64,000 nt of DNA from Malacoraja senta (taxonomy: Eukaryota): positions 62,001 to 126,000 of the forward strand of contig JAXLNO010001468.1 in NCBI GenBank assembly GCA_038087875.1. Direction: 5' to 3'. The notes below the pieces were generated by a model, which saw only the letters and a list, made by a program, of their open reading frames with translations, did not search any database and was not told where the DNA came from. A program made the translations under genes and the position numbers. This document shows positions 39,176 through 64,000 of the stretch, piece after piece. Each line of letters begins with the position of its first letter. Position 1 is the stretch's first letter.

Positions 39176-39506
39176 TTGATGTAGATTGACGTAGGTAGCC
39201 GCCAATGGAATTCACCGAAGTCAGCACCAGCGACAACCTACGTCAACTGGCGACAACCTACGTCATCCTGGTGACAACCTACGACAGCACCTATGTCAAG
39301 TGAAGTGAAGCTACGCTCATTGGCATCAAGCCCACTGTCGCCGATTGTCGCCGAAAATTTTTGAACATTTCAAAATCCAGCAGCGACCAGAAAAACGTTA
39401 TATCTCTTTGGGCGACTGAGGAGACTACTCACGACCATACAGGCAACACCCTGGCGACCATGTGGCGACAACCTAGTCGCCTTTAGTCACCTAAAAAAAA
39501 TCGCCT

Positions 39507-40488: not shown

Positions 40489-43400
40489 ATAGAAACATAG
40501 ACATAGAAAATAGGTACAGGAGTAGGCCATTCGGCCCTTCGAGCCTGCACCGCCATTCAATATGATCATGGCTGATCATCCAACTCAGTATCCCGTACCT
40601 GCCTTCTCTCCATACCCCCTGATCCCCTTAGCCACAAGGGCCACATCTAACTCCCTCTTAAATATAGCCAATGAACTGGCCTCAAATACCTTCTGTGGCA
40701 GAGAATTCCAGAGATTCACCACGCTCTGTGTGAAAAATGTTTTTCTCATCTCGGTCCTAAAAGACTTCCCCCTTATCCTTAAACTGTGACCCCTTGTTCT
40801 GGGCTTCCCCAACATCGGGAACAATCTTCCTGCATCTAGCCTGTCCAACCCCTTAAGAATTTTGTAAGTTTCTATAAGATCCCCCCTCAATTTTCTAAAT
40901 TCTAGCGAGTACAAGCCGAGTCTATCCAGTCTTTCTTCATATGAAAGTCCTGACATCCCAGGAATCAGTCTGGTGAACCTTCTCTGTACTCCCTCTATGG
41001 CAAGAATGTCTTTCCTCAGATTAGGAGACCAAAACTGTACGCAATACTCCAGGTGTGGTCTCACCAAGACCCTGTACAACTGCAGTAGAACCTCCCTGCT
41101 CCTATACTCAAATCCTTTTGCTATGAATGCTAACATACCATTCGCTTTCTTCACTGCCTGCTGCACCTGCATGCCTACTTTCATTGACTGGTGTACCATG
41201 ACACACAGGTCTCATTGCATCTCCCCTTTTCCTAATCGGCCACCATTCAGATAATAGTCTACTCTCCTGTTTTTGCCACCAAAGTGGATAACCTCACATT
41301 TATCCACATTATACTGCATCTGCCATGCATTTTCCCACTCACCCAACCTATCCAAGTCACCTTGCAGTCTCCTAGCATCCTCCTCACAGCTAACACTGCC
41401 CCCCAGCTTTGTGTCATCCGCAAACTTGGAGATGTTGCATTCAATTCCCTCGTCCAAATCATTAATATATATTGTAAATAGCTGGGGTCCCAGCACCGAG
41501 CCTTGCGGTACCCCACTAGTCACTGCCTGCCATTGTGAAAAGGACCCGTTTACTCCTACTCTTTACTTCCTGTCTGTCAGCCAGTTCTCTATCCACATCA
41601 ATACTGAACCACCAATACCGTGTGCTTTAAGTTTGCATACTAATTTCTTATGCAGGACCTAGTCGAAAGCCTTCTGAAAGTCCAGATATAACACATCCAC
41701 TGGTTCTCCCTTATCCACTCTACTAGTTACATCCTCGAAAAATTCTATAAGATTCGTCAGACATGATTTACCTTTCATAAATCCATGCTGACTTTGTCCA
41801 ATGATTTCACCACTTTCCAAATGTGCTGGTATCCCATCTTTAATAACTGACTCTAGCAGTTTCCCCACTACCGATGTTAGACTAACTGGTCTGTAATTCC
41901 CTGTTTTCTCTCTCCCTTTTTTAAAAAGTGGGGTTACATTAGCTACCCTCCAATCCTCAGGAACTACTCCAGAATCTAAAGAGTTTTGAAAAATTATCAC
42001 TAATGCATCCACTATTTCTGGGGCTACTTCCTTAAGTACTCTGGGATGCAGCCTATCGTGCCCTGGGGATTTATCGGCCTTTAATCCATTCAATTTACCT
42101 AACACCACTTCCCGGCTAACCTGGATTTCACTCAGTTCCTCCATCTCATTTGACCCCCAGTTCCCTGCTATTTCTGGCAGATTATTTATGCCTTCCTTAG
42201 TGAAGACAGAACCAAAGTAGTTATTCAATTGGTCTGCCATGTCCTTGTTCCTCATGATCAATTCACCTGTTTCTAACTGCAATGGACCTACATTTGTTTT
42301 AACTAATCTTTTTCTCTTCACGTATATATAAAAAAAATTGCACAGTTTTTATGTTCCCTGCCAGTTTTCTTTCATAATCTATTTTCCCTTTCCTAATTAA
42401 GCCCTTTGTTCTCCTCGGCTGGACTCTGAATTTCTCCCAGTCCTCTGGTAGGCTGCTTTTTCTGGCTAATTTGTATGCTTCATCTTTTGTTTTGATACTA
42501 TCCCTGATTTCCCTTGTAATCCACGGATGCACTACCTTCCCTGATTTATTCTTTTGCCAAACTGGGATGAACAATTGTTGTAGTTCATCCATGCAGTTTT
42601 TAAATGCCTTCCATTGCCTATCCGTCAACCCTTTAAGGATCAATTGCCAGTCTATCTTGGCCAATGCACGACTCATACCCTCAACGTTACCTTTATTTAA
42701 GTTCAGAACCCTTGTTTCTGAATTAATTATGTCACTCTCCATCCTAATGAAGAACTCAACCATATTATGGTCACTCTTGCCCAAGGGGCCACGCACAAGA
42801 CTGCTAACTAACCCTTCCTCATTACTCAATACCCAGTCTAGAATAGCCTGCTCTCTCGTTGGTTCCTCTACATGTTGGTTTAGAAAACTATCCCGCATAC
42901 ATTCCAAGAAATCCTCTTCCTCAGCACCCCTGCCAATTTGATTCACCCAATCTATATGTAGATTGAAGTCACCCATTATAACTGTTTTACCTTTGTTGCA
43001 CACATTTCTAATTTCCTGTTTGATGCCATCCCCAACTCCACTACTACTGTTAGGTGGCCTGTACACAACTCCCACTAGAGTTTTCGGCCCCTTAGTGTTT
43101 CGCAGCTCTATCCATATCGATTCCACATCCTCCAAGCTAATGTCCTTCCTTTCTATTGCGTTAATCTCCTCTCTAACCAGCAACGCTACCCCACCTCCTT
43201 TTCCTTTCTGTCTATCCCTCCTGAATATTGAATATCCCTGGATGTTCAGCTCCCAGCCTTGGTCACCCTGGAGCCATGTCTCTGTGATCCAACTATATCA
43301 TATTCATTAATAACTATCTGCACATTCAACTCATCCACCTTATTACGAATGCTCCTTGCATTGAGACATAAAGCCTTCAGGCTTGTTTTTACAACACTCT

Positions 43401-43672
43401 TACCCCTTATACAATTATGTTGAAAAATGGCCCTTTTTGATTTTTGCCCTGGATTTGTCTGCTTGCCACTTTTACTTTTCACCTTGCTACCTATTGCTTC
43501 TATCCTCATTTTACTCCCCTCTCCCAATTTAAGAAACCCACCACCACTTATTCTCTGTTTATCTTTTTCTTCTTTCTCCCCTACATGTTGTGTCTGAGTG
43601 CTTCCCTTCTCTGCCTCCTGCCTCACACACTGTCTACTACCTTTCTCTATTTGAGTCCCTCCCCCCAACCGT
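40489..43672 (-). mobile_element. CR1 LINE with near-complete, frameshifted ORF2 and no ORF1
   Basis: ORFs 43246..43668, 42299..43183, 41659..42321, 41212..41523 and 40585..41199 tile endonuclease + RT; (TTTCTATG)n tail. Confidence 0.94.
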
Positions 43673-44460: not shown

Positions 44461-44789
44461 GTTTTAATCTATTGGAAGGTAAAGCCAATTATTGTCTACT
44501 CTCAGTATTTTTGGTATTGTGGTCCGAGGTACACCTAGTCAGCTCCATCAGATAGACCACATTGTACAGAAGCCTGACAATACACTCTCAAAACAGAATA
44601 TCAATTTTAAGCTCCGTCATAGTAAGAGATTCTGAGTTACACAAAGGTTCAGGGATAGTTTTCAAACTTGCTTGAAAAGATGCCGTATTTCCACTGATTC
44701 CTGGGAATACCTGGTCCATTAGTGCTCAAGGTGGAGGGGATTCCAGAGCTTCTAGGAGCCCAACATAAATGATGGATAGAGCACATCAC

Positions 44790-46258: not shown

Positions 46259-48086
46259 ACTGAGTAACTTTGAGCATTCCTTTGCTGGTGAAGATGGTCA
46301 CACCATGCATTAATGTTTTGTAGTCATTGTCTCATTAACATTCTACCCTGTCCCAACCTCTTTGTTTCATCTAAGAATGTAGGGAGGAGTAGGCCCTGTG
46401 TGCCTTGGCTCCACCATCAATGAGATTTAATGTTGACCTCAAATGCATTTTATTGCCCATTCCCCATAACCCTTGACTCTCGTATAATACAAAAATGTCG
46501 ACAGTAATCTTGAATATATTCAAAGACGGCCTCCATGCCCATCTAGGGCAGAAAATTCCGAAGATTCACAACATTCTGGGAGCTAAAATCCCTCCTTATC
46601 TCACACGTACTTGTCTGACCCCCTATTCCTGGCTGGTGATCCTGGGAATCTACTTCAGTAAGGAAATAAAGACTATCCAACTAGCCTAAATAAACACAAA
46701 GACCTCAAAACTACTCTACTCCTCAAATGTTTCCACTGTGGTACTTCATAATCTTTAAAATTGCATTATCAAACCATTACTTTATTTTCTGTTTCCTTCT
46801 CCCATACTGTTTTTTTAATCATTGGTGTTATCCTATATCCATGGCCTTTGACCTATATGTGTTAGTAACATTTTAAATGATAAGAATTTTAAAGACAGTA
46901 ATTTTGGTCTAATTGATATTCTATATCACAATTTCTTTGGGATACCAGTTTCCCAAGAGGTTGTGCAGCTCGTGTAGTTTATTTTTGCTGCAGCTCAAAA
47001 GTGTTTGTGAAATCAAAGTTGCTTTCCATATATTAAATTTCATAAATGTAGAAGATTTAGAAAGCTAAACTCTAAACAAATAAACGTCACATTTACAGTA
47101 AGTGCTTTGACTGAACCTATAGAGTAACACTGCTGTGATTATATTTAACTCTCAGACCATCAGGATTCACAGACTATCATGAGAAAGAGCTCAGATAATT
47201 ATACAGTTTATTAAAACCCGCAACATTAGTCAATATAATCAGTAGTACAAGTGTCCACACAAGTTCTCAGATATTCACTCGCTTTTAGAACCAGCCAAAT
47301 CATTAATTCTAGACATGCAATCTTTCCTGGACTGACAGCATCGCAAAATGTACTGGAACTGGACTTTTTGTTTAAAATGATTGCAAGTGTCACTGAAATT
47401 CCTGGTTTTCACCTTTGAGACTTATTATTCTCAAATGTTGACAACAGTAAAGTTGACAATATTATATTCGAATTGTGAAAAGTCTTTGCTAATATTTTTA
47501 ATTACTTAATTTGAGAGGTGTATTAAGTAAAAAAATAAATACTATTTTAGTTAATTTGTTTCATCTAAATTATTGCAGGCGTTGACATATTAGGTGAAAA
47601 AATGATTGAAATAACATATGTGGACAGTAATGCAAATTGAGTTGAACAATAGTTTAGTTCAAAGAGTACAATTCTTTTGGTTTGGATTTCCAGTTCCAGC
47701 TTCAGAAAACGGAGTCACCAACCAATGGTCCCCAGCTGAGAGTGCAGTACCTAAACCAGCACACAGTTCCGAGATTCAACCACAATGGAAGGTGTCCCAG
47801 TTCAATGTGTTAGGAATTCATTGCAAAAGTGGTTCAAATGTTCAGGGAAGAATGCAGCAGCATTTAAAAAATATATATATACAGATAATCAACAGCATTG
47901 CCGTAGGAGGTCAAATATGTTTTGATCCACAAACAGTAGAACAGTAAGTGTAAAGTGCCTTGCTCCTGGCTCACATATGGCCTCCCATTACCCACAAGGG
48001 AAGGATGGGATCAAGTCCAGCACCATTTTGCATCTGAAAAAAACTAGATCTGTTTCACTGAGTGCTAATAGTTTGAATTATGCCTG

Positions 48087-50232
48087 GAACATAGAAACAT
48101 AGAAAGTAGGTGCAGGAGGAGGCCATTTGGCCCTTCGAGCCAGCACCGCCATTCATTGTGATCATAGCTGATTGTCCCCTATCAATAACCCGTGCCTGCC
48201 TTCTCCCCATATCCCTTGACTCCACTAGCCCCTAGAGTTCTATCTAACTCTCTCTTAAATCCATCCAGTGATTTGGCCTCCTCTGCCCTCTGTGGCAGGG
48301 AATTCCACAAATTCACAACTCTCTGGGTGAAAAAGTTTTTTCTCACCTCAGTCTTAAATGACCTCCACTTTATTCTAAGACTGTGGCCCCTGGTTCTGGA
48401 CTCGCCCAACATTGGGAACATTTTTCCTGCATCTAGCTTGTCCAGTCCTTTTATAATTTTATATGTTTCTATAAGATCCCCCCTCATCCTTCTAAACTCC
48501 AGTGAATACAAGCCTAGTCTTTTCAATCTTTCCTCATATGACAGCCCCGCCATCCCAGGGATCAATCTCGTGAACCTACGCTGCACTGCCTCAATCACAA
48601 GGATGTCCTTCCTCAAAGTAGGAGACCAAAACTGTACGCAATACTGCAGATGTGGTCTCACCAGAGCCCTATACAACTACAGAAGAACCTCTTTACTCCT
48701 ATACTGAAATCCTCTTGTTATGAAGGCCAACATTCCATTAGCTTTCTTCACTGCCTGTAAACCAACTTTCAGTGACCGGTGTACAAGGACGCCCAGGTCT
48801 CGCTGCACCTCCCCCTTGCCTAACCTAACCCCATTGAGATAATAATCTGCCCCCTTGTTTTTGCCGCCAAAGTGGATAACCTCACATTTATCTATATTAT
48901 ACTGCATCTGCCACGCATCTGCCCACTCGCTCAACCAGTCCAGGTCACCCTGCAACCTCCTAACATCCTCTTCACAGTTCACACTGCCACCCAGCTTTGT
49001 GTCATCTGCAAACTTGCTAGTGTTGCTCCTAATTCCCTCTTCCAAATCATTAATATCTATGTATCTATGTATCTATGTAAACAGTTGCGGCCCCAACACC
49101 GAGCCTTGCGGCACTCCACTCGCCACTCGCCACTGCCTGCCATTCTGAAAAGGACCCGTTCACTTCTACTCTTTGCTTCCGGTCTGCCAACCAATTTTCT
49201 ATCCATGTCAACACCCTACCCCCAATACCATGTGCTCTAATTTTAGTCACCAGTCTCCTGTGCGGGACCTTATCAAAGGCTTTCTGAAAGTCTAAATACA
49301 CTACATCCACTGGCACCCCTTCATCTATTTTACTTGTCACATCCTAAAAAAAATCCAGAAGATTAGTCAAGCATGATTTCCCTTTCATAAATCCATGTTG
49401 ACTTGGACTAATCCTTTTACTGCTATCCAAATGCCCCATTATCACCTCTTTAATAATTGACTCCAGCATCTTTCCCACCACTGAAGTCAGGCTAACTGGT
49501 CTGTAATTCCCCATTTTCTCTCTCGCCCCTTTCTTGAAAAGTGAGATAACATTAACTATCCTCCAATCCACAGGAACTGATCCTGAATCTATTGAACATT
49601 GGAAAATGATCACCAATGCATCCACTATTTCTAGAGCCACCTCCCTGAGGACCCTGGGATGCAAACCATCAGGCCCAGGCGATTTATCATCCTTCAGTCC
49701 CATTAGACTACCCAATATTATTTCTCGCCTAATGAAAATTTCTTTCAGTTCCTCTACCCCCTTAGATCCTCTGTCCTCCAGTACATCTGGGAGATTGTTT
49801 GTGTCTTCCTTAGTGAAGACAGATCCGAAGTACCTATTCAACTCTTCTGCCATTTCCTTGTTGCCCATAATAATTTCACCCGTGTCTGCCTTCAAGGGAC
49901 CCACATTTGACTTTGCTACTCTTTTTCCCTTAACATATCTAAAGAAGCTTTTACTGTCCTTCTTTATATTCCTGGCCAGCTTCCCTTCATACTTCATCTT
50001 TTCAGCCCGTATTGCCCGTTTTGTTTCCTTCTGTTGTCCTATGAAAGTTTCCCAATCCTCTGGCTTCTGGCTACTCTTTGCTGTGTTATACATCTTTTCT
50101 TTTAGTTTTATTCTATCCCTAACTTTTCTTGTCAGCCACGGTTGCCTCCTACTCCCCTTAGAATCTTTCTTCCTTTTTGGAATGAAATGATCCTGTGTCT
50201 TCCGGATTATGCCCAGAAATTCCTGCCATTGC
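48087..50232 (-). mobile_element. 5'-truncated CR1, distinct subfamily
   Basis: ORFs 49344..50234, 49065..49340, 48677..49045 and 48182..48676 tile the RT; (TTTCTATG)n tail. Confidence 0.93.
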
Positions 50233-50538: not shown

Positions 50539-50708
50539 TCACAGTATATCTCCCGCTAATTCGTAAGATTTTGTCAAGTTGATTCTTCGAAAGGCATAAT
50601 ACAAAGCAGAAAATATCAGTCCTGCTGATGCACTTGTGGCTACTGTGCACACTGTTTCCAGAACTCCTGTAGGAATCTCGGCAGGTGTTGCTATATCAGG
50701 TATTTTTT
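50539..50708 (-). CDS. vcam1: Terminal exon of a VCAM1-like gene: stalk, TM, short cytoplasmic tail
   Basis: Acceptor TCTTTACAG, phase 1; translates (E)KIPDIATPAEIPTGVLETVCTVATSASAGLIFSALYYAFRRINLTKSYELAGDIL*. The tail resembles VCAM1 IYFARKANMKGSYSL as recalled; orthology is untested. Confidence 0.7.
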
Positions 50709-50797: not shown

Positions 50798-51075
50798 TGA
50801 TAACTTATATTTCCACAAATCCTGTCTGTTTCCCAAGTTTATTAATCACTTTGGCCTTACAAAGCCCAGCGTCACTTGGTGTATTTGTCAAGGAATGTAA
50901 AGTTGTTGTTAGCAAAGGACAGCACATTTTCACTATTGTTCACTGGTTTCTTCCAGGTGAAATTGGTTAAGTGGATGTTATGAATGGTGCAACCAATGGT
51001 GACCTTTTCTCCTTCATCGACCAGTTTGGAAGGATGAGAGCAGTCAGGTTTGGTGATGAGGGGGAAAATACATGT
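50798..51075 (-). pseudogene. Decayed Ig-domain exon (VCAM1 membrane-proximal-domain-like)
   Basis: Remnants ITK..PSKLVDEGEKVTIGCT..FTWKK and SDAGL.K.KVINKLGKQ..VEI*VI, with frameshifts and a TAA; GTAAGT donor at 50792..50797. Confidence 0.75.
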
Positions 51076-51510
51076 CTATTGACTCTGTGCATCTACCCGA
51101 TCTATACATTTCATGATGTCTATTCATGATTGTTACAATCATAGATTATTGCAATTTATAATAATCACCATGACATGTGAGCTCAAGTTTCTGTTCAAGG
51201 AATTAGGCACAAAAAGCTCCAGAACTTTGTGACTTTTTGTTGTTGTAAATCAGCATATACAATTTAATTTTCTTCATCATTACAACTAATTGTTTTTCCT
51301 CACATTGCTCTTTGTGAGAATGTGCTGCACCACATTTCGTTGCTTCACATTTCAAAGGCACTTTATTGGTGATAAAGTGTTTGTATAATCCTTAATCGTA
51401 TGAATGCTCCCCATAAATCCAAGTCATTCTTTCCCCCCCTCGTAAAAATTCAAATGAAAATATTTTTCATATTCAGTTCCTGTAAATTACTCATTAATTT
51501 CCATACAAAC

Positions 51511-51774
51511 CTTGAACCTGGAGATTGTTGATGTTGATCTGCTTCCCCAGAGCATTAGTGGCCTCACATTGATACTGCCCTGCATCAGCTGGCTGGACAG
51601 CACGGATTGTCAATGTCCCATTCTCAGAGTCTAGCTCGCTCCATACGCTCGATGACTGCCTCCTCAGTACCAGCTGGGCAGGGGGGTTGGACTGGGTTGT
51701 GCAACTGAACGTGACCCTGTCTCCTTCCTTCACAGCAGAGGGTGTGATGGAGAGAGTGGTGTTCCTGGGGCTAC
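51511..51774 (-). CDS. Ig-domain exon U1 of the VCAM1-like gene (264 bp, phase 1-1)
   Basis: CAG acceptor, GTTTGT donor; GSPRNTTLSITPSAVKEGDRVTFSC...DAGQYQCEATNALGKQININNLQVQ. Confidence 0.9.
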
Positions 51775-52824
51775 CTGAGACCAGAGGCGTGAGAAATTAA
51801 TGAATTACAAAAGGTTTAGCCAAATCCGTACAAAGAACATAGTCATAGCCATAAAGTGATATAGTGTGGAAACAGGCCCTTCAGCTCAACTTGCCCACAC
51901 AAGCCATCATGTATGCCCCAGCTACACTAGTTCCGCCTGCCCGTGTTTGGTCCATGTCCCTCCAAACCTGTCCTATCCATGTACCTATCTAACTGTTTCT
52001 TAAATGTTGGGATAGTCCCAGCCTCAACTACCTCCTCTAGCAGCTTGTTCCATACACCCACCACCCTTGGTGTAAAAAAATTACCCCTCAGATTCCTATT
52101 GTCTTTTCCCCTACACATTAAACCTATGTTCTCTGGTCCTTGATTCACCTACTCTGGGCAAGAGATTCTGTGCATCTACCCGATCTATTCATATCATTAT
52201 GTCTATTAATGATTGTAACAATCATAGATTATTGCAATGTATAATAATCACCATGACTTGTGAGCTCAAGTTTCTGTTCAAGGAATTAGGCGCAAAAAGC
52301 TAGAAAGTCTCTCCAGTCCTGTGCCAAAGGATGGCAGCAGTTAGTTACACTTTCACATAAGTTGTTCAATTAAAGCCCCTCTAGTTGACATAAAAGATTC
52401 TGTAACACAATTTTAAATTTAAAGTGGCAGAGATCTGCCCAGTTTATTCTAGTATCCTGGTCAATATTTATCACTAAACCAACATCAGTCTGAAGAAGGA
52501 TCCCAACTTGAAACGTTACCCATCCATGTTCTCCAGGGATGTTACCTGACCCACTGAGTTACTCCAGAACTTTGTGTCTTTTTGTTGCTGTAAATCAGCA
52601 TATACAATTTATATTTCTTCATCATAATGTGCTGCACCACATTTCGTTGCTTCACATGTGAAAGGCACTTTATTGGTGATAAAGTGTTTGCGTAGTCCTG
52701 AATGGTATGAATGCTCCCCCATCAATCCAAGTCATTCTTCCCCCCCCCCCCCCTCGTAATAATTCAAGTGAAAATACTTTTCACATTCAGTTCCTGTAAA
52801 TTTCTCATTAATTTCCATACAAAC

Positions 52825-53088
52825 CTTGAACCTGGAGTTTGTTGTTGTTGATCTGCTTCCCCAGAGCATTAGTGGCCTCACATTGATACTGCCCTGCATC
52901 AGCTGGCTGGACAGCACGGATTGTCAATGTCCCATTCTCAGAGTCCAGCTCGCTCCATCCGCTCGATGACTGCCTCCTCAGTACCAGCTGGGCAGGGGGG
53001 TTGGACTGGGTTGTGCAGCTGAACGTGACCCTGTCTCCTTCCTTCACAGCAGAGGGGGTGATGGAGAGAGTGGTGTCCCTGGGCCTAC
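52825..53088 (-). CDS. Ig-domain exon U2
   Basis: Same splice sites; variant GRPRD / SGW / INNNKL. Confidence 0.9.
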
Positions 53089-53291
53089 CTGAAACCAGAG
53101 GCGTGAGAAATAATGAATTGCAAAAGGTTTAGCCAAATCCGTGCAAAGAAACATAGTCATAGCCATAAAGTGATAGTGTGGAAACAGGCCCTTCGGCTCA
53201 ACTTGCCCACACCAGCCATCATGTCCCAGCTACACTAGTCCCGCATGCCCGTGTTTGGTCCATGTCCCTCCAAACCTGTCCTATCCATGTA

Positions 53292-55348
53292 AGCCGTCGC
53301 CTTACCTGCAAACTGGACTCTGTACTGGGCCTGAAGCCTCCACGCTGTTCACTCCCACTCTCCGGGGTTTGACTCCACTGGGTCCTAGCGCTAGTCTGCC
53401 TAGCCCTGGTTATCTCAGTGGCAGTTCCACTGATTCTTCCCCATCCCTCTCCAACAAAAAAACACCCACACCACTGCCCTCTCACCCCCCCACCCCCTGA
53501 CCACCCACCACCCCCCCACCACACATCGCCTCGTCCCCATTACACCCACCTGCCTTCCTCCGGCCCCAACCCCCATCCCTGCCGGGTGTTCACCATCCCC
53601 CCCGACCTCCCCCTCTCCGACATCGAACGGTCTGTCCTCAGCAGAGGTCTTACCTTTGTCCCCCTCCGTCCCCATCTCAATGAGTTCCGTGCCCTCCATG
53701 ACTTGGAACGCTTCTACCGTCGCCTCCGCCTCACAGCTCACTTCCATGGGAAGCAGTCCTCGCTCCCCACTGATGACCCCTTTTCCCGTCTCCAACGCAC
53801 CCCATCCTCATGGAACCCCCCTCGCAGCCTTCCGGCTTTAGAACTCTTTATTAAAAAACTGCCGCCGTGACATCCACCGCCTCAACTTCTCCACTCCCCT
53901 GTCTCACTCCAATCTCTCCCCCCTTGAACGCACTGCCATCGACTCACTCCGCAACAACCTAGATTAGGTTATCAAACCCGCCGACAAGGGAGGTGCCGTG
54001 GTAGTCTGGCGCGTCGACCTCTACAAAGCTGAGGCCACGCGCCAACTCTCGGACACCTCTTCCTACTTACCCCTGGACCATGATGATTGTTTTGGTGCCA
54101 CATCCTGCACCCACACACAACTGACTGACTTCATCCGCTTCACCACCAACTTCCATCCGGCACTTAAATACACCTGGACCATTTCCGACACTTCCCTACC
54201 ATTCCTTGACCTCACTATCTCCATCGCAGGTGATAGACTCCTTACCGACATCCACTACAAACCTACCGACTCCCATGGCTATCTGGACTACACTTCTTCC
54301 CACCCTGCTTCCTGTAAGGACTCCATCCCCCACTCCCAATTCCTCCGTCTACGCCGCATCTGCTCCCAGGATGAGGCGTTCCACACCAGGGCATCTGAAA
54401 TGTCCTCATTCTTCAGGGAACGGGGGTTCCCCTCCTCCACCATAGATGAGGCTCGCACCAGGGTCTCTGCCATACCCCGCAACACTGCTCTCTCTCCCCA
54501 TCCCCCCACTCACAACAAAGGCAGAGTCCCCCTAGTCCTCACCTTTCACCCCACCAGCCGTCACATACAACAAGTGATCCTCCGTCAGTTTCGCCACCTC
54601 CAACGTGACCCCACCACTCGCCACATCTTCCCATCTCCCCCTATGTCTGCCTTCCGCAAAGACCGCTCCCTCCGTAACTCCCTTGTCAATTCTTCCCTTC
54701 CCTCCCATACCACCCCCTCCCCTGGTACTTTCCCTTGCAACCGCAAGAGATGCAACACTTGTCCCTTCACTTCCCCCCTCCACTCCATTCCAGGACCCAA
54801 GCAGTCGTTCCAGGTGCGACAGAGGTTCACCTGCACCTCCTCCAACCTCATCTATTGCATTCGCTGCTCTAGATGCCAGCTGATCTACATCGGTGAGACC
54901 AAGCGGAGGCTTGGCGATCGTTTCGCCGAACACCTCCGGTCGGTCCGCAATAACCAACCTGAATTCCCGGTGGCTCAGCACTTCAACTCCCCCTCCCATT
55001 CCGTATCTGACCTCTCTGTCCTGGGTCTCCTCCATGGCCACAGCGAGCAACACCGTAAATTGGAGGAAATGCACCTCATATTCCGCTTGGGCAGTCTACA
55101 CCCTGGTGGCCTGAACGTTGAATTCTCCCAATTCTGCTAGCCCTGGCTGCCCCCTCCCCTTCATCAGCCATCTGGTTGTCTCCTCCCCTCCCCCAACCCT
55201 CGGGCTCCTCCTCCCTCCTTTTCCTTTTTTCCTTTCTTCTCCCCACCCCCTATCAGTCTGAAGAAGGGTTTCGGCCCGAAACGTTACCTATTTCCTTCGC
55301 TCCATAGATGCTGCTGCACCCGCTGAGTTTCTCCAGCATTTTTGTGTA
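53292..55348 (+). mobile_element. Penelope-like element (RT + GIY-YIG), internally deleted, intronic
   Basis: 11-bp TSD CTATCCATGTA (53281..53291, 55349..55359); LSRGLTFVP, IKPADKGG and IYCIRC..C.LIYIGETKRRLGDRFAEH; RT core missing at ~54085. Confidence 0.93.
55258..55285 (+). ncRNA. Minimal hammerhead ribozyme-like motif in the Penelope 3' region
   Basis: CTGAAGA, one extra A, stem II GGG-TTTCGG-CCC, GAAAC, palindromic ACGT helix III; the cleavage triplet would be GUU. Confidence 0.6.
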
Positions 55349-56236
55349 CTATCCATGTACCTGTCTGACTGTTTCTTAAATGTTTGGATAGTCCCAGCCT
55401 CAACTACCTCCTCTAGCAGCTTGTTCCGTACACCCACCACCCTTGGTGTAAAAAAAATACCCCTCAGATCCCTATTAAGTCTTTTCCCCTACACATTAAA
55501 CCTATGTTCTCTGGTCCTTGATTCACCTACTCTGGGCAAGAGATTCTGTGCATCTACCCGATCTATTCATCTCATGATGTATATTAACGATTGTTACAAT
55601 CATAGATTATTGCAATGTATGATAATCACCATGAGATGTGGGTTTAAGTTTTTGTTCAAGGAATTAGGCACAAAAAGCTAGAAAGTCTCTCCAGTCCTCT
55701 GCCAAAGGATGGCAGCAGTTAGTTACACTTTCACATAAGTTGTTAAATTAAAGTCTCCTCTAGTTGACATAAAAGATTCTGTAACACAATTTTAAATTTA
55801 AAGTGGCAGAGTTCTGCCCAATTTATTCTAGTATCCTGGTCAATATTTATCACTAAACCAACATCAGTCTAAAGAAGGATCCCAACTTGAAACGTTACCC
55901 ATCCATGTTCTCCAGGGATGTTACCTGACCCACTGAGTTACTCCAGAACTTTGTGTCCTTTTGTTGTTGTAAATCAGCATATACAATTTATATTTCTTCA
56001 TCATAACAACTAATTGTTTTTCCTCACATTGCTCTTTGTGAGAATGTGCTGCACCACATTTCGTTGCTTCACATGTCAAAGGCACTTTATTGGTGATAGT
56101 GCTTGCGTAGTCCTGAATGGTATGAATGCTCCCCCATAAATCCAAGTCATTCTCCCCGCCCCCCCTCGTAATAATTCAAGTGAAAATACTTTTCACATTC
56201 AGTTCCTGTAAATTTCTCATTAATTTCCATACAAAC

Positions 56237-56500
56237 CTTGAACCTGGAGATTGTTGATGTTGATCTGCTTCCCCAGAGCATTAGTGGCCTCACATTGATA
56301 CTGCCCTGCATCAGCTGGCTGGACAGCACGGATTGTCAATGTCCCATTCTCAGAGTCTAGCTCGCTCCATACGCTCGATGACTGCCTCCTCAGTACCAGC
56401 TGGGCAGGGGGGTTGGACTGGGTTGTGCAACTGAACGTGACCCTGTCTCCTTCCTTCACAGCAGAGGGGGTGATGGAGAGAGTGGTGTTCCTGGGGCTAC
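56237..56500 (-). CDS. Ig-domain exon U3
   Basis: Same splice sites; protein identical to U1. Confidence 0.9.
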
Positions 56501-57549
56501 CTGAGACCAGAGGCGTGAGAAATTAATGAATTACAAAAGGTTTAGCCAAATCCGTACAAAGAACATAGTCATAGCCATAAAGTGATATAGTGTGGAAACA
56601 GGCCCTTCAGCTCAAGTTGCCCACACCAGCCATCATGTATGCCCCAGCTACACTAGTTCCGCCTGCCCGTGTTTGGTCCATGTCCCTCCAAACCTGTCCT
56701 ATCCATGTACCTATCTAACTGTTTCTTAAATGTTGGGATAGTCCCAGCCTCAACTACCTCCTCTAGCAGCTTGTTCCATACACCCACCACCCTTGGTGTA
56801 AAAAAATTACCCCTCAGATTCCTATTGTCTTTTCCCCTACACATTAAACCTATGTTCTCTGGTCCTTGATTCACCTACTCTGGGCAAGAGATTCTGTGCA
56901 TCTACCCGATCTATTCATATCATTATGTCTATTAATGATTGTAACAATCATAGATTATTGCAATGTATAATAATCACCATGACTTGTGAGCTCAAGTTTC
57001 TGTTCAAGGAATTAGGCGCAAAAAGCTAGAAAGTCTCTCCAGTCCTGTGCCAAAGGATGGCAGCAGTTAGTTACACTTTCACGTAAGTTGTTCAATTAAA
57101 GCCCCTCTAGTTGACATAATAGATTCTGTAACACAATTTTAAATTTAAAGTGGCAGAGATCTGCCCAGTTTATTCTAGTATCCTGGTCAATATTTATCAC
57201 TAAACCAACAACAGTCTGAAGAAGGATCCCAACTTGAAACGTTACCCATCCATGTTCTCCAGGGATGTTACCTGACCCACTGAGTTACTCCAGAACTTTG
57301 TGTCTTTTTGTTGCTGTAAATCAGCATATACAATTTATATTTCTTCATCATAATGTGCTGCACTACATTTCGTTGCTTCACATGTCAAAGGCACTTTATT
57401 GGTGATAAAGTGTTTGCGTAGTCCTGAATGGTATGAATGCTCCCCCATCAATCCAAGTCATTCTTCCCCCCCCCCCCCTCGTAATAATTCAAGTGAAAAT
57501 ACTTTTCACATTCAGTTCCTGTAAATTTCTCATTAATTTCCATACAAAC

Positions 57550-57813
57550 CTTGAACCTGGAGTTTGTTGTTGTTGATCTGCTTCCCCAGAGCATTAGTGG
57601 CCTCACATTGATACTGCCCTGCATCAGCTGGCTGGACAGCACGGATTGTCAATGTCCCATTCTCAGAGTCTAGCTCGATCCATACGCTCGATGACTGCCT
57701 CCTCAGTACCAGCTGGGCAAGGGGGTTGGACTGGGTTGTGCAACTGAACGTGACCCTGTCTCCTTCCTTCACAGCAGAGGGGGTGATGGAGAGAGTGGTG
57801 TTCCTGGGGCTAC
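57550..57813 (-). CDS. Ig-domain exon U4
   Basis: GSPRN / NPLAQ / VWI / INNNKL variant; splice sites intact. Confidence 0.9.
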
Positions 57814-58861
57814 CTGAGACCAGAGGCGTGAGAAATTAATGAATTACAAAAGGTTTAGCCAAATCCGTACAAAGAACATAGTCATAGCCATAAAGTGATA
57901 TAGTGTGGAAACAGGCCCTTCAGCTCAACTTGCCCACACCAGTCATCATGTATGCCCCAGCTACACTAGTTCCGCCTGCCCGTGTTTGGTCCATGTCCCT
58001 CCAAACCTGTCCTATCCATGTACCTATCTAACTGTTTCTTAAATGTTGGGATAGTCCCAGCCTCAACTACCTCCTCTAGCAGCTTGTTCCATACACCCAC
58101 CACCCTTGGTGTAAAAAAATTACCCCTCAGATTCCTATTGTCTTTTCCCCTACACATTAAACCTATGTTCTCTGGTCCTTGATTCACCTACTCTGGGCAA
58201 GAGATTCTGTGCATCTACCCGATCTATTCATATCATTATGTCTATTAATGATTGTAACAATCATAGATTATTGCAATGTATAATAATCACCATGACTTGT
58301 GAGCTCAAGTTTCTGTTCAAGGAATTAGGCGCAAAAAGCTAGAAAGTCTCTCCAGTCCTGTGCCAAAGGATGGCAGCAGTTAGTTACACTTTCACATAAG
58401 TTGTTCAATTAAAGCCCCTCTAGTTGACATAAAAGATTCTGTAACACAATTTTAAATTTAAAGTGGCAGAGATCTGCCCAGTTTATTCTAGTATCCTGGT
58501 CAATATTTATCACTAAACCAACATCAGTCTGAAGAAGGATCCCAACTTGAAACGTTACCCATCCATGTTCTCCAGGGATGTTACCTGACCTACTGAGTTA
58601 CTCCAGAACTTTGTGTCTTTTTCTTGCTGTAAATCAGCATATACAATTTATATTTCTTCGTCATAATGTGCTGCACTACATTTCGTTGCTTCACATGTCA
58701 AAGGCACTTTATTGGTGATAAAGTGTTTGCGTAGTCCTGAATGGTATGAATGCTCCCCCATCAATCCAAGTCATTCTTCCCCCCCCCCCCTCGTAATAAT
58801 TCAAGTGAAAATACTTTTCACATTCAGTTCCTGTAAATTTCTCATTAATTTCCATACAAAC

Positions 58862-59125
58862 CTTGAACCTGGAGTTTGTTGTTGTTGATCTGCTTCCCCA
58901 GAGCATTAGTGGCCTCACATTGATACTGCCCTGCATCAGCTGGCTGGACAGCACGGATTGTCAATGTCCCATTCTCAGAGTCCAGCTCGCTCCATCCGCT
59001 CGATGACTGCCTCCTCAGTACCAGCTGGGCAGGGGGGTTGGACTGGGTTGTGCAGCTGAACGTGACCCTGTCTCCTTCCTTCACAGCAGAGGGGGTGATG
59101 GAGAGAGTGGTGTCCCTGGGCCTAC
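58862..59125 (-). CDS. Ig-domain exon U5
   Basis: Protein identical to U2; splice sites intact. Confidence 0.9.
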
Positions 59126-60201
59126 CTGAAACCAGAGGCGTGAGAAATTAATGAATTGCAAAAGGTTTAGCCAAATCCGTGCAAAGAAACATAGTCATAG
59201 CCATAAAGTGATAGTGTGGAAACAGGCCCTTCGGCTCAACTTGCCCACACCAGCCATCATGTCCCAGCTACACTAGTCCCGCATGCCCGTGTTTGGTCCA
59301 TGTCCCTCCAAACCTGTCCTATCCATGTACCTGTCTGACTGTTTCTTAAATGTTGGGATAGTCCCAGCCTCAACTACCTCCTCTAGCAGCTTGTTCCATA
59401 CACCCACCACCCTTGGTGTAAAAAAATTACCCCTCAGATTCCTATTAAGTCTTATCCCCTACACATTAAACCTATGTTCTCTGGTCCTCGATTCACCTAC
59501 TCTGGGCAAGAGACTCTGTGCATCTACCCGATCTATTCATATCATTATGTATATTAATGATTGTTACAATCATAGATTATTGCAATGTATGATAATCACC
59601 ATGAGATGTGGGTTTAAGTTTTTGTTCAAGGAATTAGGCACAAAAAGCTAGAAAGTCTCTCCAGTCCTGTGCCAAAGGATGGCAGCAGTTAGTTACACTT
59701 TCACATAAGTTGTTAATTTAAAGTTTCCTCTAATTGACATAAAAGATTCTGTAACACAATTTAAAATTTAAAGTGGCAGAGTTCTGCCCAATTTATTCTA
59801 GTATCCTGGTCAATATTTATCACTAAACCAACATCAGTCTGAAGAAGGATCCCAACTTGAAACGTTACCCATCCATGTTCTCCAGGGATGTTACCTGACC
59901 CACTGAGTTACTCCAGAACTTTGTCTTTTTGTTGTTGTAAATCAGCATATACAATTTATATTTCTTCATCATAACAACTAATTGTTTTTCCTCACATTGG
60001 TCTTTGTGAGAATGTGCTGCACCACATTTCGTTGCTTCACATGTCAAAGGCACTTTATTGGTGATAAAGTGTTTGCGTAGTCCTGAATGGTATGAATGCT
60101 CCCCCATAAATCCAAGTCATTCTCCCCCCCTCGTAATAATTCAAGTGAAAATACTTTTCACATTCAGTTCCTGTAAATTTCTCATTAATTTCCATACAAA
60201 C

Positions 60202-60465
60202 CTTGAACCTGGAGTTTGTTGTTGTTGATCTGCTTCCCCAGAGCATTAGTGGCCTCACATTGATACTGTCCTGCATCAGCTGGCTGGACAGCACGGATTG
60301 TCAATGTCCCATTCTCAGAGTCTAGCTCGCTCCATCCGCTCGATGACTGCCTCCTCAGTACCAGCTGGGCAGGGGGGTTGGACTGGGTTGTGCAGCTGAA
60401 CGTGACCCTGTCTCCTTCCTTCACAGCAGAGGGGGTGATGGAGAGAGTGGTGTCCCTGGGGCTAC
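60202..60465 (-). CDS. Ig-domain exon U6
   Basis: GSPRD / SGW / INNNKL variant; splice sites intact. Confidence 0.9.
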
Positions 60466-60905
60466 CTGAGACCAGAGGCGTGAGAAATTAATGAATTGCA
60501 AAAGGTTTAGCCAAATCCGTGCAAAGAAACATAGTCATAGCCATAACGTGATATAGTGTGGAAACAGGCCCTTAGGCTCAACTTGCCCACACCAGCCATC
60601 ATGTATGTCCCAGCTACACTAGTCCCGCCTGCCCGTGTTTGCTCCATGTCCCTCCAAACCTGTCCTATCCATGTATCTGTCTGACTGTTTCTTAAATGTT
60701 GGGATAGTCCCAGCCTCAACTACCTCCTCTAGCAGCTTGTTCCATACACCCACCACCCTTGGTGTAAAAAAATTACCCCTCAGATTCCTATTAAGTCTTT
60801 TCCCCTACACATTAAACCTATGGTCTCTGGTCCTTGATTCACCTACTCTGGGCAAGAGATTCTGTGCATCTACCCGATCTATTCATCTCATGATGTATAT
60901 TAATG

Positions 60906-63633
60906 TCTTCTGAGACGCCCAGGGACCGTTGCAGAAGGAGGAGCAGCGTCCGGGTGGTGAGTAGATAAACGGCGCGGGGCTTTGCTTTCCAGACGCCCAG
61001 GGACCGTTGCAGAAGGAGGAGCAGCGTCCGGGTGGTGAGTAGATAAACGGCGCGGGGCTTTGCTTTCCAGACGCCCAGGGACCGTTGAACCAAAACTGCA
61101 ACGTTCCATTCAAGTTTCCTATAAGTGAGGAAGCCGCTGATTGGTGGAAGAGGACCAAGAGAAAGCAGCTGATTGGTGGAAGAGGACAAAGAGAAAGCAG
61201 CTGATTGGGAGTCAGATCCCTGCTGATTTCCTCCACCAGTTTTGTATTGTATCCAGGGTAAGGGGGGAGAATGAGGGCCAGGGCAGTTTACTGTTCTGGA
61301 TGTCAGATGTGGGAGGTCATGGAGTCTGATACCCCTCCAGACTTTCACATCTGTGCCAGGTGCGTAGAGATGGGGTTCCTAAGGGACCGTGTTAGGAACC
61401 TGGAGCAGCAGCTCGATGACCTCTGTCTGATCAGGGAGAGTGAGGAGGTCATAGAAAAGAGTTATAGGGAGGTGGCCACTCCAAGACCACGGGAGGCAGA
61501 CAAGTGGGTCACGGTTAGGAAGGGCAAGGAGCAGAGGCAGGGACTAGTGAGTACCCCAGTGGCTGTACACCTTGAAAATAAGTACTCCTGTTTGAGTACT
61601 GTTGAGGGGGACAGCCTTCCTGCGGGTAGCAACAGCGGCCGGGCCTCCGGCACAGAGACCAGCCCGATTGCTCAGAAGGGTAGGGAAAAGAAGAGGAGGG
61701 CAATAGTAATAGGGGACTCTATGGTTAGGGGGTCGGATAGGCGATTCTGTGGACGCAGTCAGGAGACCCGGATGGTAGTTTGCCTCCCTGGTGCCAGGGT
61801 CAGGGATGTGTCTGAACGCGTCCAAGATATCCTGAAATCGGAGGGAGAGGAGCCTGAGGTTGTGGTACATATAGGTACCAATGATATAGGTAGAAAAAGA
61901 GAAGAGGTCTTGAAAGGAGAATTTAGGGAGTTGGGAGGAGAGTTACGGAGAAGGACTACAAAGGTAACAATCTCAGGATTACTACCTGTGCCACGCGACG
62001 GTGAGAGTAGGAATGGAGTGAGGTGGAGGATAAATGCGTGGCTGAGGAACTGGTGCAGCGGGCAGGGATTCAATTTCTGGATCATTGGGACCTCTTTTGG
62101 GGAAGGTGTGACCTGTACAGAAAGGACGGGTTGCACTTGAACACGAGGGGGACCAATATCCTGGCGGGGAGATTTGCAAAGGCTACTGGGGAGACTTTAA
62201 ACTACAACGGTTGGGGGGAGGGACTCAAATAGAGAAAGCTAGTGGAAAATGTGGGAGGCAGGAGGCAGAGAAGGGAAGCACTCGGACCCAAAATGTAGGG
62301 GAGAAAGAAGAAAAAGATAATAAACAGAGAATAAGTGGTGGTGGGTTTCTTAAATGTGTATATTTTAATGCTAGGAGCATTGTAAGAAAGGTGGATGAAC
62401 TTAGAGCCTGGATTGACACCTGGAAGTATGATGTTGTGGCGATCAGTGAAACATGGTTGCAGGAGGGCTGTGATTGGCAAATAAATATTCCAGGATTTCG
62501 TTGCTTCAGGGGTGATAGAATTGGAGGGGCAAGAGGTGGGGGTGTTGCATTGCTTGTCAAGGAAGATATTACAGCAGTGCTTTGGCAGGATAGATTAGAG
62601 GGCTCGTCTAGGGAGGCTATTTGGGTGGAACTGAGAAATGGGAAAGGTGTAGCAACACTTATAAGGGTGTATTATAGACCGCCAAATGGGGAGCGGGAAT
62701 TGGAAGAGCAAATATGTAAGGAGATAGCAGATATTAGTAGTAAGCACAAGGTAGTGATTGTGGGAGATTTCAATTTTCCACACATAGACTGGGAAACACA
62801 TTCTGTAAAAGGGCTGGATGGTTTGGAGTTTGTAAAATGTGTGCAAGATAGTTTTTTGCAGCAATACATAGAGGTACCTACTAGAGAAGGGGCAGTGCTG
62901 GACCTCCTGTTAGGAAATGAGACAGGGCAGGTGGCGGAGGTATGCGTCGGGGAGCACTTCGGGTCCAGTGATCACAATACCATTAGTTTCAATATAATTA
63001 TGGAGAGTGTCAGAACTGGACCTAGGGTTGAGACTTTTGTTTGGAGAAAGGCTAACTTTGAGGAGATGCGAAAGGATTTAAAAGGAGTGAATTGGGACAT
63101 GTTGTTTTATGGGAAGGATGTAGAAGAAAAATGGAGGACATTTAAGGGTGAAATTTTAAGAGTACAGAATCTTTATGTCCCTGTTCGGTTGAAAGGAAAT
63201 AGTAAAAAATGGAAAGAGCCATGGTTTTCAAGGGAAATTGGACACGGTTCGGAAAAAGAGAGAGATCTACAATAATTATAGGCAGCATGGAGTAAATGAG
63301 GTGCTTGAGGAGTATAAAGAATGTAAAAAGAATATTAAGAAAGAAATTAGAAAAGCTAAAAGAAGATATGAGGTTGCTTTGGCAAGTAAGGTGAAAGTAA
63401 ATCCAAAGGGTTTCTACAGCTATATTAATAGCAAAATGATAACAAGGAATAAAATTGGTCCATTAGAGAGTCAGAGTGGACAGCTATCTGCAGAGCCAAA
63501 AGAGATGGGGGAGATATTGAACAATTTCTTTTCTTCGGTATTTACGAAGGAGAAGAATATGGAATTATGTGAGGTAAGGGAAACAAGCAGAGTAGCAATG
63601 GAAACTGTGAGATTCAAAGAAGAGGAGGTGCGG
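60906..63633 (+). mobile_element. CR1 with intact 5'UTR and ORF1 but a truncated 3' end
   Basis: 78-bp monomers, CTGATTGG repeats, ORF1 at ~61271..62205 (SGNH esterase), ORF2 endonuclease 62211..63275; ends abruptly in intron sequence. Confidence 0.92.
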
Positions 63634-64000
63634 ACAATTTATATTTCTTCAACATAACAACTAATTGTTTTTCCTCACATTGATCTTTGTGAGAATGTGC
63701 TGCACCCCTCAGATTCCTATTAAGTCTTTTCCCCTACACATTAAACCTATGGTCTCTGGTCCTTGATTCACCTACTCTGGGCAAGAGATTATGTGCATCT
63801 ACCCGATCTATTCATCTCATGATGTATATTAATGATTGTTACAATCATAGATTATTGCAATGTATGATAATCACCATGAGATGTGGGTTTAAGTTTTTGT
63901 TCAAGGAATTAGGCACAAAAAGCTAGAAAGTCTCTCCAGTCCTGTGCCAAAGGATGGCAGCAGTTAGTTACACTTTCACATAAGTTGTTAAATTAAAGTC

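What the first reader, a model, noticed from the sequence alone, without database searches (positions are those of the whole stretch)
51511..60465. VCAM1-like gene with at least six near-identical tandem Ig-domain exons, a modular length-variable ectodomain
Seen: six 264-bp exons, all phase 1-1, all with intact AG/GT sites and open frames, each encoding one 88-aa Ig domain (C..DAGQYQC), spaced ~1.3 kb apart upstream of a TM exon. Known: mammalian VCAM1 has 7 Ig domains, and domains 4-6 arose by duplication. Inference: this fish gene has a recently amplified stalk. Symmetric exons can be skipped in any combination without a frameshift, so receptor height could vary by splicing or by copy-number allele. 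The N-terminal integrin-binding domains would lie beyond the right edge.
Basis: partly seen in the sequence, partly recalled or inferred. Interest (0 to 1): 0.85.

Follow-up and report, generated by a model that had tools for sequence, protein, structure and literature searches.

The report
Skate VCAM1 gene with amplified Ig exon
This is the 3' half of a skate VCAM1-family adhesion receptor gene in which one immunoglobulin-domain exon, with its intron, has been copied in tandem at least six times, giving a long stalk of near-identical domains whose number differs between related skates.

Summary
Six 264-bp, phase 1-1 exons lie on the minus strand. All have AG/GT sites and open frames, and each encodes an 88-aa I-set Ig domain. 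They sit in about 1.31-kb exon-plus-intron units that are 95-99% identical.

The gene is a VCAM1-family member. The window is collinear at 91-94% with the thorny skate locus of XP_032885016, which NCBI labels "hemicentin-2-like". That protein has VCAM1-type D1-D3 followed by 14 copies of the same exon. Rhinoraja longicauda has 13 copies, sharks have 1-5.

The six window units form their own clade (100/99) against the 14 thorny-skate units. The array has therefore expanded or been homogenised since the species split, and it is not an assembly artefact.

- A dead membrane-proximal Ig exon lies between the array and the TM exon. Its acceptor is now AA, it has a 4-nt deletion and a stop, and it shares a 1-nt frameshift with thorny skate.
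- A weak alternative terminal exon lies about 6 kb downstream.
- A second tandem paralogue exists outside the window.

Amino-acid constraint on the repeat is not detectable (dN/dS about 1). However, 20 exons in two species carry no indel, against about 7.8 expected.

Function as a variable-length stalk is inferred, and expression is untested. The scan also noted this array in the overlapping window.

The parts
60202..60465 (-). Dx Ig-domain exon, copy 6 (the most 5' copy in the window)
   Evidence: 264 bp, AG|..|GT, phase 1-1, open frame; Pfam I-set/Ig_3
58862..59125 (-). Dx Ig-domain exon, copy 5
   Evidence: identical in sequence to copy 2
57550..57813 (-). Dx Ig-domain exon, copy 4
   Evidence: carries two private amino-acid changes (P31L, S45I)
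56237..56500 (-). Dx Ig-domain exon, copy 3
   Evidence: differs from copy 1 by 1 nt
52825..53088 (-). Dx Ig-domain exon, copy 2
51511..51774 (-). Dx Ig-domain exon, copy 1 (last copy before the 3' exons)
51081..64000 (-). Tandem array of about 1.31-kb exon-plus-intron units. It runs off the right edge of the window. Left of copy 1 there is a partial unit of intron only.
   Evidence: units are 95-99.3% identical, in two subtypes (copies 1, 3, 4 versus copies 2, 5, 6)
53292..55344 (+). Penelope-like (GIY-YIG) retroelement inserted in the intron of unit 2
   Evidence: Gap in unit homology; the ORF at 53998-55140 has a weak GIY-YIG match, 3.2e-4, just under Pfam's cutoff
60906..63705 (+). LINE fragment (esterase-type ORF1 plus AP endonuclease) inserted in the intron of unit 6. 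It is flanked by a 130-bp duplication (60776-60905 and 63706-63835).
50798..51049 (-). Decayed membrane-proximal Ig exon (pseudoexon), homologous to the last Ig domain of shark VCAM1-like proteins
   Evidence: the acceptor is AA instead of AG; there is a 4-nt deletion, a 1-nt frameshift shared with A. radiata, and a TAA three codons before the GTAAGT donor
50539..50708 (-). Transmembrane plus short cytoplasmic tail exon, stop codon included
   Evidence: It is 50% identical to the sawshark VCAM1-like tail at E 1e-14. It is intact in A. radiata, where the only indels are in frame.
44649..44710 (-). Candidate alternative terminal coding exon (19 codons plus stop, no TM). This is the exon that ends the NCBI model of the A. 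radiata orthologue.
   Evidence: The acceptor is ccag|GT, phase 1. It differs from A. radiata at 5 of 57 nt, all amino-acid changing, so it is not conserved above background.

Best explanation
The stretch is the 3' part of a skate VCAM1-family gene, the first of two tandem paralogues. One internal exon encodes the fourth I-set Ig domain; I call it Dx, the penultimate domain of the five-domain shark form. This exon was amplified in tandem together with about 1.05 kb of intron, most likely by unequal crossing-over between units. The window holds six intact copies, and the array continues past the right edge. Because every copy is phase 1-1, any number of copies splices in frame. The old membrane-proximal Ig exon is dead, so the last Dx exon should splice straight to the TM/tail exon. 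The predicted product is a type I membrane protein. Its integrin-binding D1-D2 head (outside the window) would sit on a long, glycosylated stalk of near-identical Ig domains. Stalk length changes quickly in evolution through gain and loss of units. What is shown: the anatomy, the family assignment, the orthology to the thorny-skate locus, the lineage-specific expansion or homogenisation, and the death of the last Ig exon. What is inferred: expression of all copies, TM anchoring, and the idea that stalk length tunes the reach of the adhesion head.
For: Anatomy.

Family:
- the top hit has 15 matched stretches at 86% identity.
- relatives are named VCAM1 or VCAM1-like.
- a shark relative matches tetrapod VCAM1 at about 1e-133, against CD22/ICAM5 at 1e-66 or weaker.
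- the tail exon matches shark tails.
- the WRxxxDxPL loop of D1 is kept in skate orthologues.

Orthology and reality of the array:
- the window is collinear with A. radiata at 91-94%.
- A. radiata has 14 intact exons.
- R. longicauda has 13 copies, 12 of them identical in protein.
- two window units carry unique TE insertions.

Dynamics:
- the window units are one clade (100/99).
- copies cluster by species or lineage.
- copy number is 1, 2, 3, 5 or 13-14 across elasmobranchs.

Coding maintenance:
- there are no indels in 20 exons, where about 7.8 are expected from intron indel density (P about 4e-4). In A. radiata the exons also vary less than the introns (p 0.005).
- the TM exon is intact in both species, with in-frame indels only.
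- NCBI models of the second paralogue join the last Dx exon directly to the TM exon.

Fold. A two-domain model has pLDDT 91 and superposes best on extended Ig pairs (TM about 0.8).
Against: No transcript or protein data for this species were available. dN/dS is about 1, both between the species' consensus exons (7 nonsynonymous to 2 synonymous) and within the arrays, so the amino-acid sequence of the repeat shows no measurable constraint. The NCBI model of the A. radiata orthologue skips the TM exon and ends in an unconserved 19-codon exon. The TM exon has diverged more (88.6% nt) than flanking non-coding DNA. The last Ig exon has died. Near-identical adjacent domains are generally disfavoured because they can misfold (PMC8201768, PMC4660218). 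D1-D3 of this species were not seen.
Confidence: 0.8

Rival explanations
1. The first paralogue is a decaying, non-functional duplicate. The array is a neutral by-product of unequal crossing-over, and the second paralogue (two Dx copies plus a TM exon) does the VCAM1 job.
For: dN/dS is about 1. The last Ig exon is dead. The A. radiata model lacks a TM segment. The TM exon has diverged fast. A second paralogue exists in A. radiata, L. erinacea and R. longicauda.
Against: All 20 Dx exons in two species keep their frame, their splice sites and no stop codon, while their introns gather indels. The indels in the TM exon are multiples of three. The large array has been kept in at least three skate genera.
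Confidence: 0.15
2. The copies are an assembly artefact, that is, a repeat that was over-expanded or mis-joined.
For: Units are up to 99.3% identical, a range in which assemblers can miscount copies.
Against: The copies differ by diagnostic substitutions and indels, and they fall into two subtypes. Two units carry different, unique TE insertions. Independent assemblies of other skates show 13-14 copies.
Confidence: 0.03
3. The gene belongs to another IgSF family, such as hemicentin (the NCBI label in A. radiata), CD22/Siglec or sialoadhesin.
For: NCBI names XP_032885016 'hemicentin-2-like'. A single I-set domain gives generic hits to titin, contactin and hemicentin-like proteins.
Against: That protein's D1-D3 and the tail exon are VCAM1-type. 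Hemicentin, sialoadhesin and IgSF10 score far lower and at 24-28% identity. There are no hemicentin VWA, EGF or G2F parts.
Confidence: 0.02

Closest known systems
Vertebrate VCAM1 (CD106), including the human 6D/7D splice forms
   Same: It is a type I IgSF adhesion receptor with one Ig domain per phase 1-1 exon. In the orthologues, the integrin-binding loop motif is present in D1. The cytoplasmic tail is short. Domain number is changed by internal duplication and by skipping whole-domain exons (PMC2119261, PMC2120002).
   Different: In mammals a D1-D3 block was duplicated long ago, and adjacent domains are now 23-29% identical. Here a single stalk exon is repeated 6 to 14 times at 94-100% identity, and the last Ig exon is lost.
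Shark, lungfish and frog VCAM1-like genes with repeated stalk domains
   Same: The same gene family shows runs of near-identical adjacent Ig domains: 85-99% in sharks, 77-92% in lungfish, and up to 98% in some frogs. In sharks it is the same Dx exon.
   Different: Those runs have 2-6 copies. Skates have 13-14, or at least 6 in this window. In sharks the membrane-proximal Ig domain is intact.
Bacterial Periscope proteins (PMC8201768)
   Same: Both are surface proteins with a binding head on a stalk of tandem structured domains at 80% identity or more. Repeat number varies between close relatives. Both break the rule that adjacent domains share less than about 50% identity.
   Different: Periscope proteins are bacterial, intron-less and built from other folds. 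Variation within a species is documented for them and not for the skate gene. This is an analogy, not homology.
Human coding multi-kb repeats such as LPA kringle IV-2 (from general knowledge, not tested here)
   Same: A multi-kb exon-plus-intron unit is repeated in tandem and in frame at very high identity, and it sets the size of the protein.
   Different: LPA copy number is known to vary between individuals. Nothing is known about skate populations. The domain type and the biology are also different.

Membership tests
VCAM1 family | Best similarity, over the full length, is to proteins of the VCAM1 clade rather than to other IgSF families | tested here: met
   after the skate orthologue, hits of ordinary length are named VCAM1 or VCAM1-like; a shark relative matches tetrapod VCAM1 at about 1e-133, against CD22/ICAM5 at 1e-66 or weaker.
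VCAM1 family | N-terminal D1 with the integrin-binding C-D loop motif (QIDSPL type, key Asp) | tested here: inconclusive
   D1 lies outside the window. Orthologues in A. radiata, R. longicauda and L. erinacea keep WR-x3-D-x-PL. The motif's role is from PMC2120002; its exact letters are from the rodent sequence.
VCAM1 family | Single-pass TM segment and short cytoplasmic tail of VCAM1 type | tested here: met
   The exon at 50539-50708 is 50% identical to the sawshark tail at E 1e-14 and 48% identical to whale shark at 1.6e-9. The match to caecilian is only weak (0.018), and there is no significant match to rodent.
VCAM1 family | One Ig domain per exon, with phase 1-1 boundaries | tested here: met
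   for the window; for A. radiata.
VCAM1 family | Conserved synteny with the VCAM1 locus of other vertebrates | not tested
   The window and the 10-kb flanks of L001 hold only transposable elements and the second paralogue.
Mammalian-type VCAM1 architecture | Seven domains, with D4-D6 a duplicate of D1-D3 | tested here: not met
   The skate and shark proteins are D1-D2-D3, then n copies of Dx, then (in sharks) a last domain.
I-set immunoglobulin domain | Profile match, a Cys pair about 45 residues apart with the D-x-G-x-Y-x-C motif, and a beta-sandwich fold | tested here: met
   Pfam Ig_3 at 1.7e-15 and I-set at 3.7e-13. The FSC...DAGQYQC motifs are present. The AF2 model has pLDDT 91 and matches tandem Ig pairs.
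Variable-length 'periscope'-type stalk (functional analogy) | Tandem structured domains at 80% identity or more, with repeat number differing between close relatives | tested here: met
   Adjacent-domain identity is 94-100% (window copies). Copy number is at least 6, 13 and 14 in three skates.
Variable-length 'periscope'-type stalk (functional analogy) | Length variation within a species, and an effect of length on binding | not testable with these tools
   This needs population long reads and adhesion assays.

The most novel reading that the evidence does not exclude
Skates express a VCAM1-family receptor with a stalk of 8 to 14 or more near-identical Ig domains. Stalk length is a fast-evolving trait, possibly polymorphic and adjustable by splicing, that sets how far the integrin-binding head projects from the cell. 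This would be a vertebrate counterpart of bacterial Periscope proteins and a natural exception to the rule that adjacent domains must diverge to avoid misfolding. The same gene has been hit repeatedly by such amplification in sharks, lungfish and frogs.
Probability: 0.3. Interest if true: 0.75.

Novelty: new variant of a known kind. Interest (0 to 1): 0.58.

Why it matters
VCAM1 is a textbook leukocyte-endothelium adhesion receptor, and its domain number is usually treated as fixed at about seven. Here, and in related skates, a single stalk exon has been multiplied to 6-14 near-identical copies that turn over between species. Smaller runs of the same kind appear in sharks, lungfish and frogs. 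If the long forms are expressed, they offer three things:
- A natural series for testing how ectodomain height affects integrin-mediated capture.
- A vertebrate test case for how long arrays of identical Ig domains fold without misfolding.
- A clear example of concerted evolution of an exon-intron unit inside an immune gene.

The work also corrects a public annotation: 'hemicentin-2-like' in Amblyraja radiata is a VCAM1 paralogue. I found no paper describing the array in four library searches.

Tried and rejected
- PDB sequence search with the exon gave only generic I-set hits (titin, contactins). No VCAM1 stalk domain has been solved, so this could not assign the family.
- Pfam on the TM exon found nothing.
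- Assignment of Dx to a mammalian domain is ambiguous. Rodent D7 scores slightly above D3 and D6. Caecilian and kiwi match best at their sixth domain.
- I looked for the second paralogue's exons in window 1-40000. The only hit was one weak 27-aa match at 39277-39357. The region is transposable elements (L1, CR1-like, DIRS-like).
- The alternative terminal exon used by the NCBI A. radiata model is not conserved above background, so I do not rely on a secreted isoform.
- dN/dS tests had too few sites to separate neutrality from weak constraint.
- Four literature searches for skate or elasmobranch VCAM1 exon arrays found nothing relevant.
- Synteny with the tetrapod VCAM1 neighbourhood could not be checked.
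Full report
**Observation.** The region holds a direct repeat of about 1.31 kb with six members. Start-to-start spacing is 1314, 3412, 1313, 1312 and 1340 bp. Read on the minus strand, each unit carries a 264-bp exon:
- 51511-51774
- 52825-53088
- 56237-56500
- 57550-57813
- 58862-59125
- 60202-60465

Each exon follows a pyrimidine tract and AG, and each is followed by GTTTGT. Two leading bases and one trailing base make it phase 1-1, and 87 full codons are open. Joined head to tail, each exon contributes 88 residues with the Ig hallmarks (Cys at 23, DAGQYQC at 62-68). Pfam scores it as Ig_3 (1.7e-15) and I-set (3.7e-13). Only 11 nucleotide positions vary among the six copies (7 change the amino acid, 4 are silent). 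Copies 2 and 5 are identical, and copies 1 and 3 differ by one base.

**The repeat is genomic, not only exonic.** Whole units, introns included, align at 95-99.3% and fall into two subtypes: copies 1, 3, 4 and copies 2, 5, 6. Exon divergence (0-3.0%) is about the same as intron divergence (0.7-4.0%).

Two units carry private insertions:
- A 2.05-kb Penelope-like element with a weak GIY-YIG match sits at 53292-55344. It explains the 3412-bp spacing.
- A 2.8-kb LINE fragment sits at 60906-63705. It is flanked by a 130-bp duplication of the target.

Beyond that LINE the unit simply continues to the window's edge. The array therefore runs on to the right. A first-stage note on the overlapping window (s1-140732) reports two more units there, which I could not check. 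Another note (s1-141312) reads 63634-63706 as the remnant of a unit that lost its exon. My alignment suggests instead that this is the right-hand junction of the LINE insertion with its long target-site duplication.

**What follows the array.** The last exon copy ends at 51511. At 50539-50708 there is an exon with a good acceptor, phase 1, a hydrophobic stretch, a basic stop-transfer and a 17-residue tail before the stop.

Between the two, at 50798-51049, lies a former Ig exon that is now dead. It matches the last Ig domain of the sawshark VCAM1-like protein in two different frames. Aligned with thorny skate, it shows four defects:
- The acceptor AG has become AA.
- Four bases are deleted near the 5' end.
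- A 1-nt frameshift is shared by both skates.
- The window alone has a TAA three codons before the still-good GTAAGT donor.

In thorny skate the same exon is also split by an 840-bp insertion. The shared frameshift dates the death of this exon to before the two skates diverged. Splicing of the last Dx exon directly to the TM exon is in frame (G + AA gives Glu). It is also what NCBI models of the sister paralogue do in thorny skate and little skate.

**Identity.** A search of 1.84 billion representative proteins with one exon gave a top hit with 15 matched stretches. This is XP_032885016 of Amblyraja radiata, named 'hemicentin-2-like'. Its sequence is a signal peptide, three VCAM1-type domains, and then 14 tandem copies of this same 88-residue domain.

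Below the many giant multi-Ig proteins in the list, the hits of ordinary length are named VCAM1 or VCAM1-like. They come from sawshark, whale shark, stingray, lungfish, caecilian, frogs, paddlefish and platypus. The sawshark protein in turn finds tetrapod VCAM1 at about 1e-133 over 96-98% of its length, ahead of CD22, CEACAM and ICAM5.

The window's tail exon is 50% identical to the sawshark tail (E 1e-14). The skate orthologues keep the WR-x3-D-x-PL loop of D1. That loop corresponds to the six-residue motif needed for VLA-4 binding in human D1 and D4 (PMC2120002; the letters were seen in the rodent sequence). The hemicentin label is a naming artefact of many Ig repeats.

**Orthology and copy number elsewhere.** The thorny-skate locus (L001) is collinear with the window at 91-94% nucleotide identity. 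The collinearity runs from the array through the dead exon, the TM exon and 6 kb of downstream DNA. That locus has 14 intact Dx exons at 1.34-2.17 kb spacing, all with AG/GT, and an intact TM exon. The TM exon is 88.6% identical to the window's, and its indels of 27 and 3 nt keep the frame. A second VCAM1-like paralogue begins 5.5 kb downstream. That paralogue's exons are not in the window.

Rhinoraja longicauda has 13 Dx copies in the first paralogue, 12 of them identical in protein, and two copies in the second paralogue.

Across annotated elasmobranch proteins the Dx count is as follows:

| Group | Dx copies |
|---|---|
| Whale shark, bamboo shark, sawfish | 1 |
| Stingrays (as a two-domain block) | 2 |
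| Many sharks | 3 |
| Great white shark, catshark | 5 |
| Skates | 13-14 |

Runs of adjacent domains at 77-98% identity also occur in lungfish and several frogs. Amniote, caecilian and ray-finned fish VCAM1 have adjacent domains at 23-40%.

**Dynamics.** In a protein tree, Dx copies group by species or lineage. In a DNA tree of each exon with 300 bp on either side, the six window units form one clade (100/99) that excludes all 14 thorny-skate units. Within-array exon identity is 98.0% in the window and 97.4% in thorny skate. Both exceed the between-species value of 95.1%. So the copies have been made or homogenised since the lineages split, as expected from unequal crossing-over and gene conversion among units. 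This, together with the private insertions, rules out an assembly artefact as the source of the array. The exact copy count could still be slightly off.

**Is it maintained?** The evidence is mixed:
- Amino-acid constraint is not detectable. dN/dS is about 1.1 between the two species' consensus exons (7 nonsynonymous to 2 synonymous), 0.55 within the window and about 1.3 within thorny skate. None of these is significant.
- None of the 20 exons has an indel, a stop or a broken splice site. The introns show 12 and 22 small indel intervals in the two species. Scaling by length predicts about 7.8 indels in the exons, giving P(0) of about 4e-4 as a rough estimate.
- In thorny skate the exons also vary less than the introns (p 0.005).

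This is the pattern expected of a spacer whose frame and fold matter more than its surface. It does not exclude a slowly dying gene.

**Likely working.** A two-domain AlphaFold model of the orthologue's Dx pair is confident (pLDDT 91). It superposes best on extended tandem Ig pairs such as NEGR1, OPCML and CD22 d6-d7 (TM about 0.8). Each Dx has one or two N-glycosylation sequons: NGT in all copies, and NTT in copies 1, 3 and 4.

I therefore read the product as a membrane-anchored adhesion receptor. Its integrin-binding head sits on a glycosylated Ig stalk, and each extra exon lengthens that stalk. Because all these exons are phase 1-1, length can change by unit gain or loss and, in principle, by exon skipping. 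NCBI isoform pairs differ by exactly 176 aa in great white shark and 88 aa in sevengill shark, which are whole Dx exons. Human VCAM1 is known to skip a whole-domain exon (PMC2119261). With repeats this similar, however, such isoform models can be mapping artefacts. VCAM1 has been detected in nurse shark plasma after immunisation (PMC9207270), so the family is expressed in elasmobranchs. I saw no expression data for this skate.

**Doubts.** The NCBI model of the thorny-skate orthologue ends in a 19-codon exon without a TM segment. Its counterpart in the window is at 44649-44710, with a weak acceptor. It differs at 5 of 57 bases, all amino-acid changing. I treat it as unproven. The TM exon has diverged somewhat faster than neighbouring non-coding DNA.

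**Comparison and novelty.** This is a member of the VCAM1 family with a non-mammalian architecture. The closest functional analogy is the bacterial Periscope proteins. Those have variable-length stalks of domains at 80% identity or more, and they break the rule that adjacent domains share less than about 50% identity to avoid misfolding (PMC8201768, PMC4660218). A further analogy, from general knowledge, is human coding multi-kb repeats such as LPA KIV-2. Gene models for the array exist in public databases under mixed names. I found no paper describing it. I rate it a new variant of a known kind, of moderate to good interest.

Noticed in passing
window 50798-51049 (-) and L001 33680-34900: The membrane-proximal Ig exon of this VCAM1 paralogue is a pseudoexon in both skates, and they share a 1-nt frameshift. 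The window species also lost the acceptor (AG to AA), has a 4-nt deletion and a TAA. A. radiata has an 840-bp insertion instead. The donor GTAAGT is still intact.
   Followed up: yes
window 60776-60905 and 63706-63835: A 2.8-kb LINE fragment (esterase-type ORF1 plus AP endonuclease, with a 78-bp tandem repeat at its 5' end) is flanked by a 130-bp, 99% identical target duplication. This is unusually long for a target-site duplication. Another note on this genome also mentions long TSDs.
   Followed up: partly
window 44649-44710 (-): A short terminal exon used by the NCBI model of the A. radiata orthologue begins like a Dx exon (G-I-P-R-N versus G-S-P-R-N). It may be the relic of an old Ig exon. 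It is not conserved above background between the two skates.
   Followed up: partly
L001 43591-48034 (A. radiata); proteins P0164 and P0252: Skates have two tandem VCAM1-like paralogues. The NCBI models for Leucoraja erinacea (1067 aa) and Rhinoraja longicauda (2100 aa) fuse the two genes into one protein. In R. longicauda the Dx copies of both paralogues are nearly identical, which suggests gene conversion between the paralogues.
   Followed up: partly
proteins P0009, P0022, P0187, P0177 (lungfish and frogs): VCAM1 proteins of lungfish and several frogs also contain runs of adjacent Ig domains at 77-98% identity. Stalk-domain amplification therefore seems to recur in this gene across vertebrates.
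   Followed up: partly
proteins P0006, P0026 versus P0182: The last Ig domain of shark and caecilian VCAM1 lacks the canonical second cysteine (Y-E-V or Y-I-I instead of Y-x-C), whereas rodent D7 has it. Rodent D7 also matches Dx better than it matches the shark last domain. Mammalian D7 may therefore correspond to Dx rather than to the ancestral last domain.
   Followed up: no
window 48085-50232 (-) and 40500-43670 (-): Two CR1-like LINE copies with reverse-transcriptase ORFs lie downstream of the TM exon. They are absent from the orthologous A. radiata positions, so they inserted after the species split.
   Followed up: partly
window 12524-15997 (+): ORFs here include an integrase SAM-like (tyrosine recombinase type) domain next to an RNase H-like region. 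This suggests a DIRS-like retroelement. Most of window 1-40000 is L1, CR1-like and similar elements, with no host exon found.
   Followed up: partly
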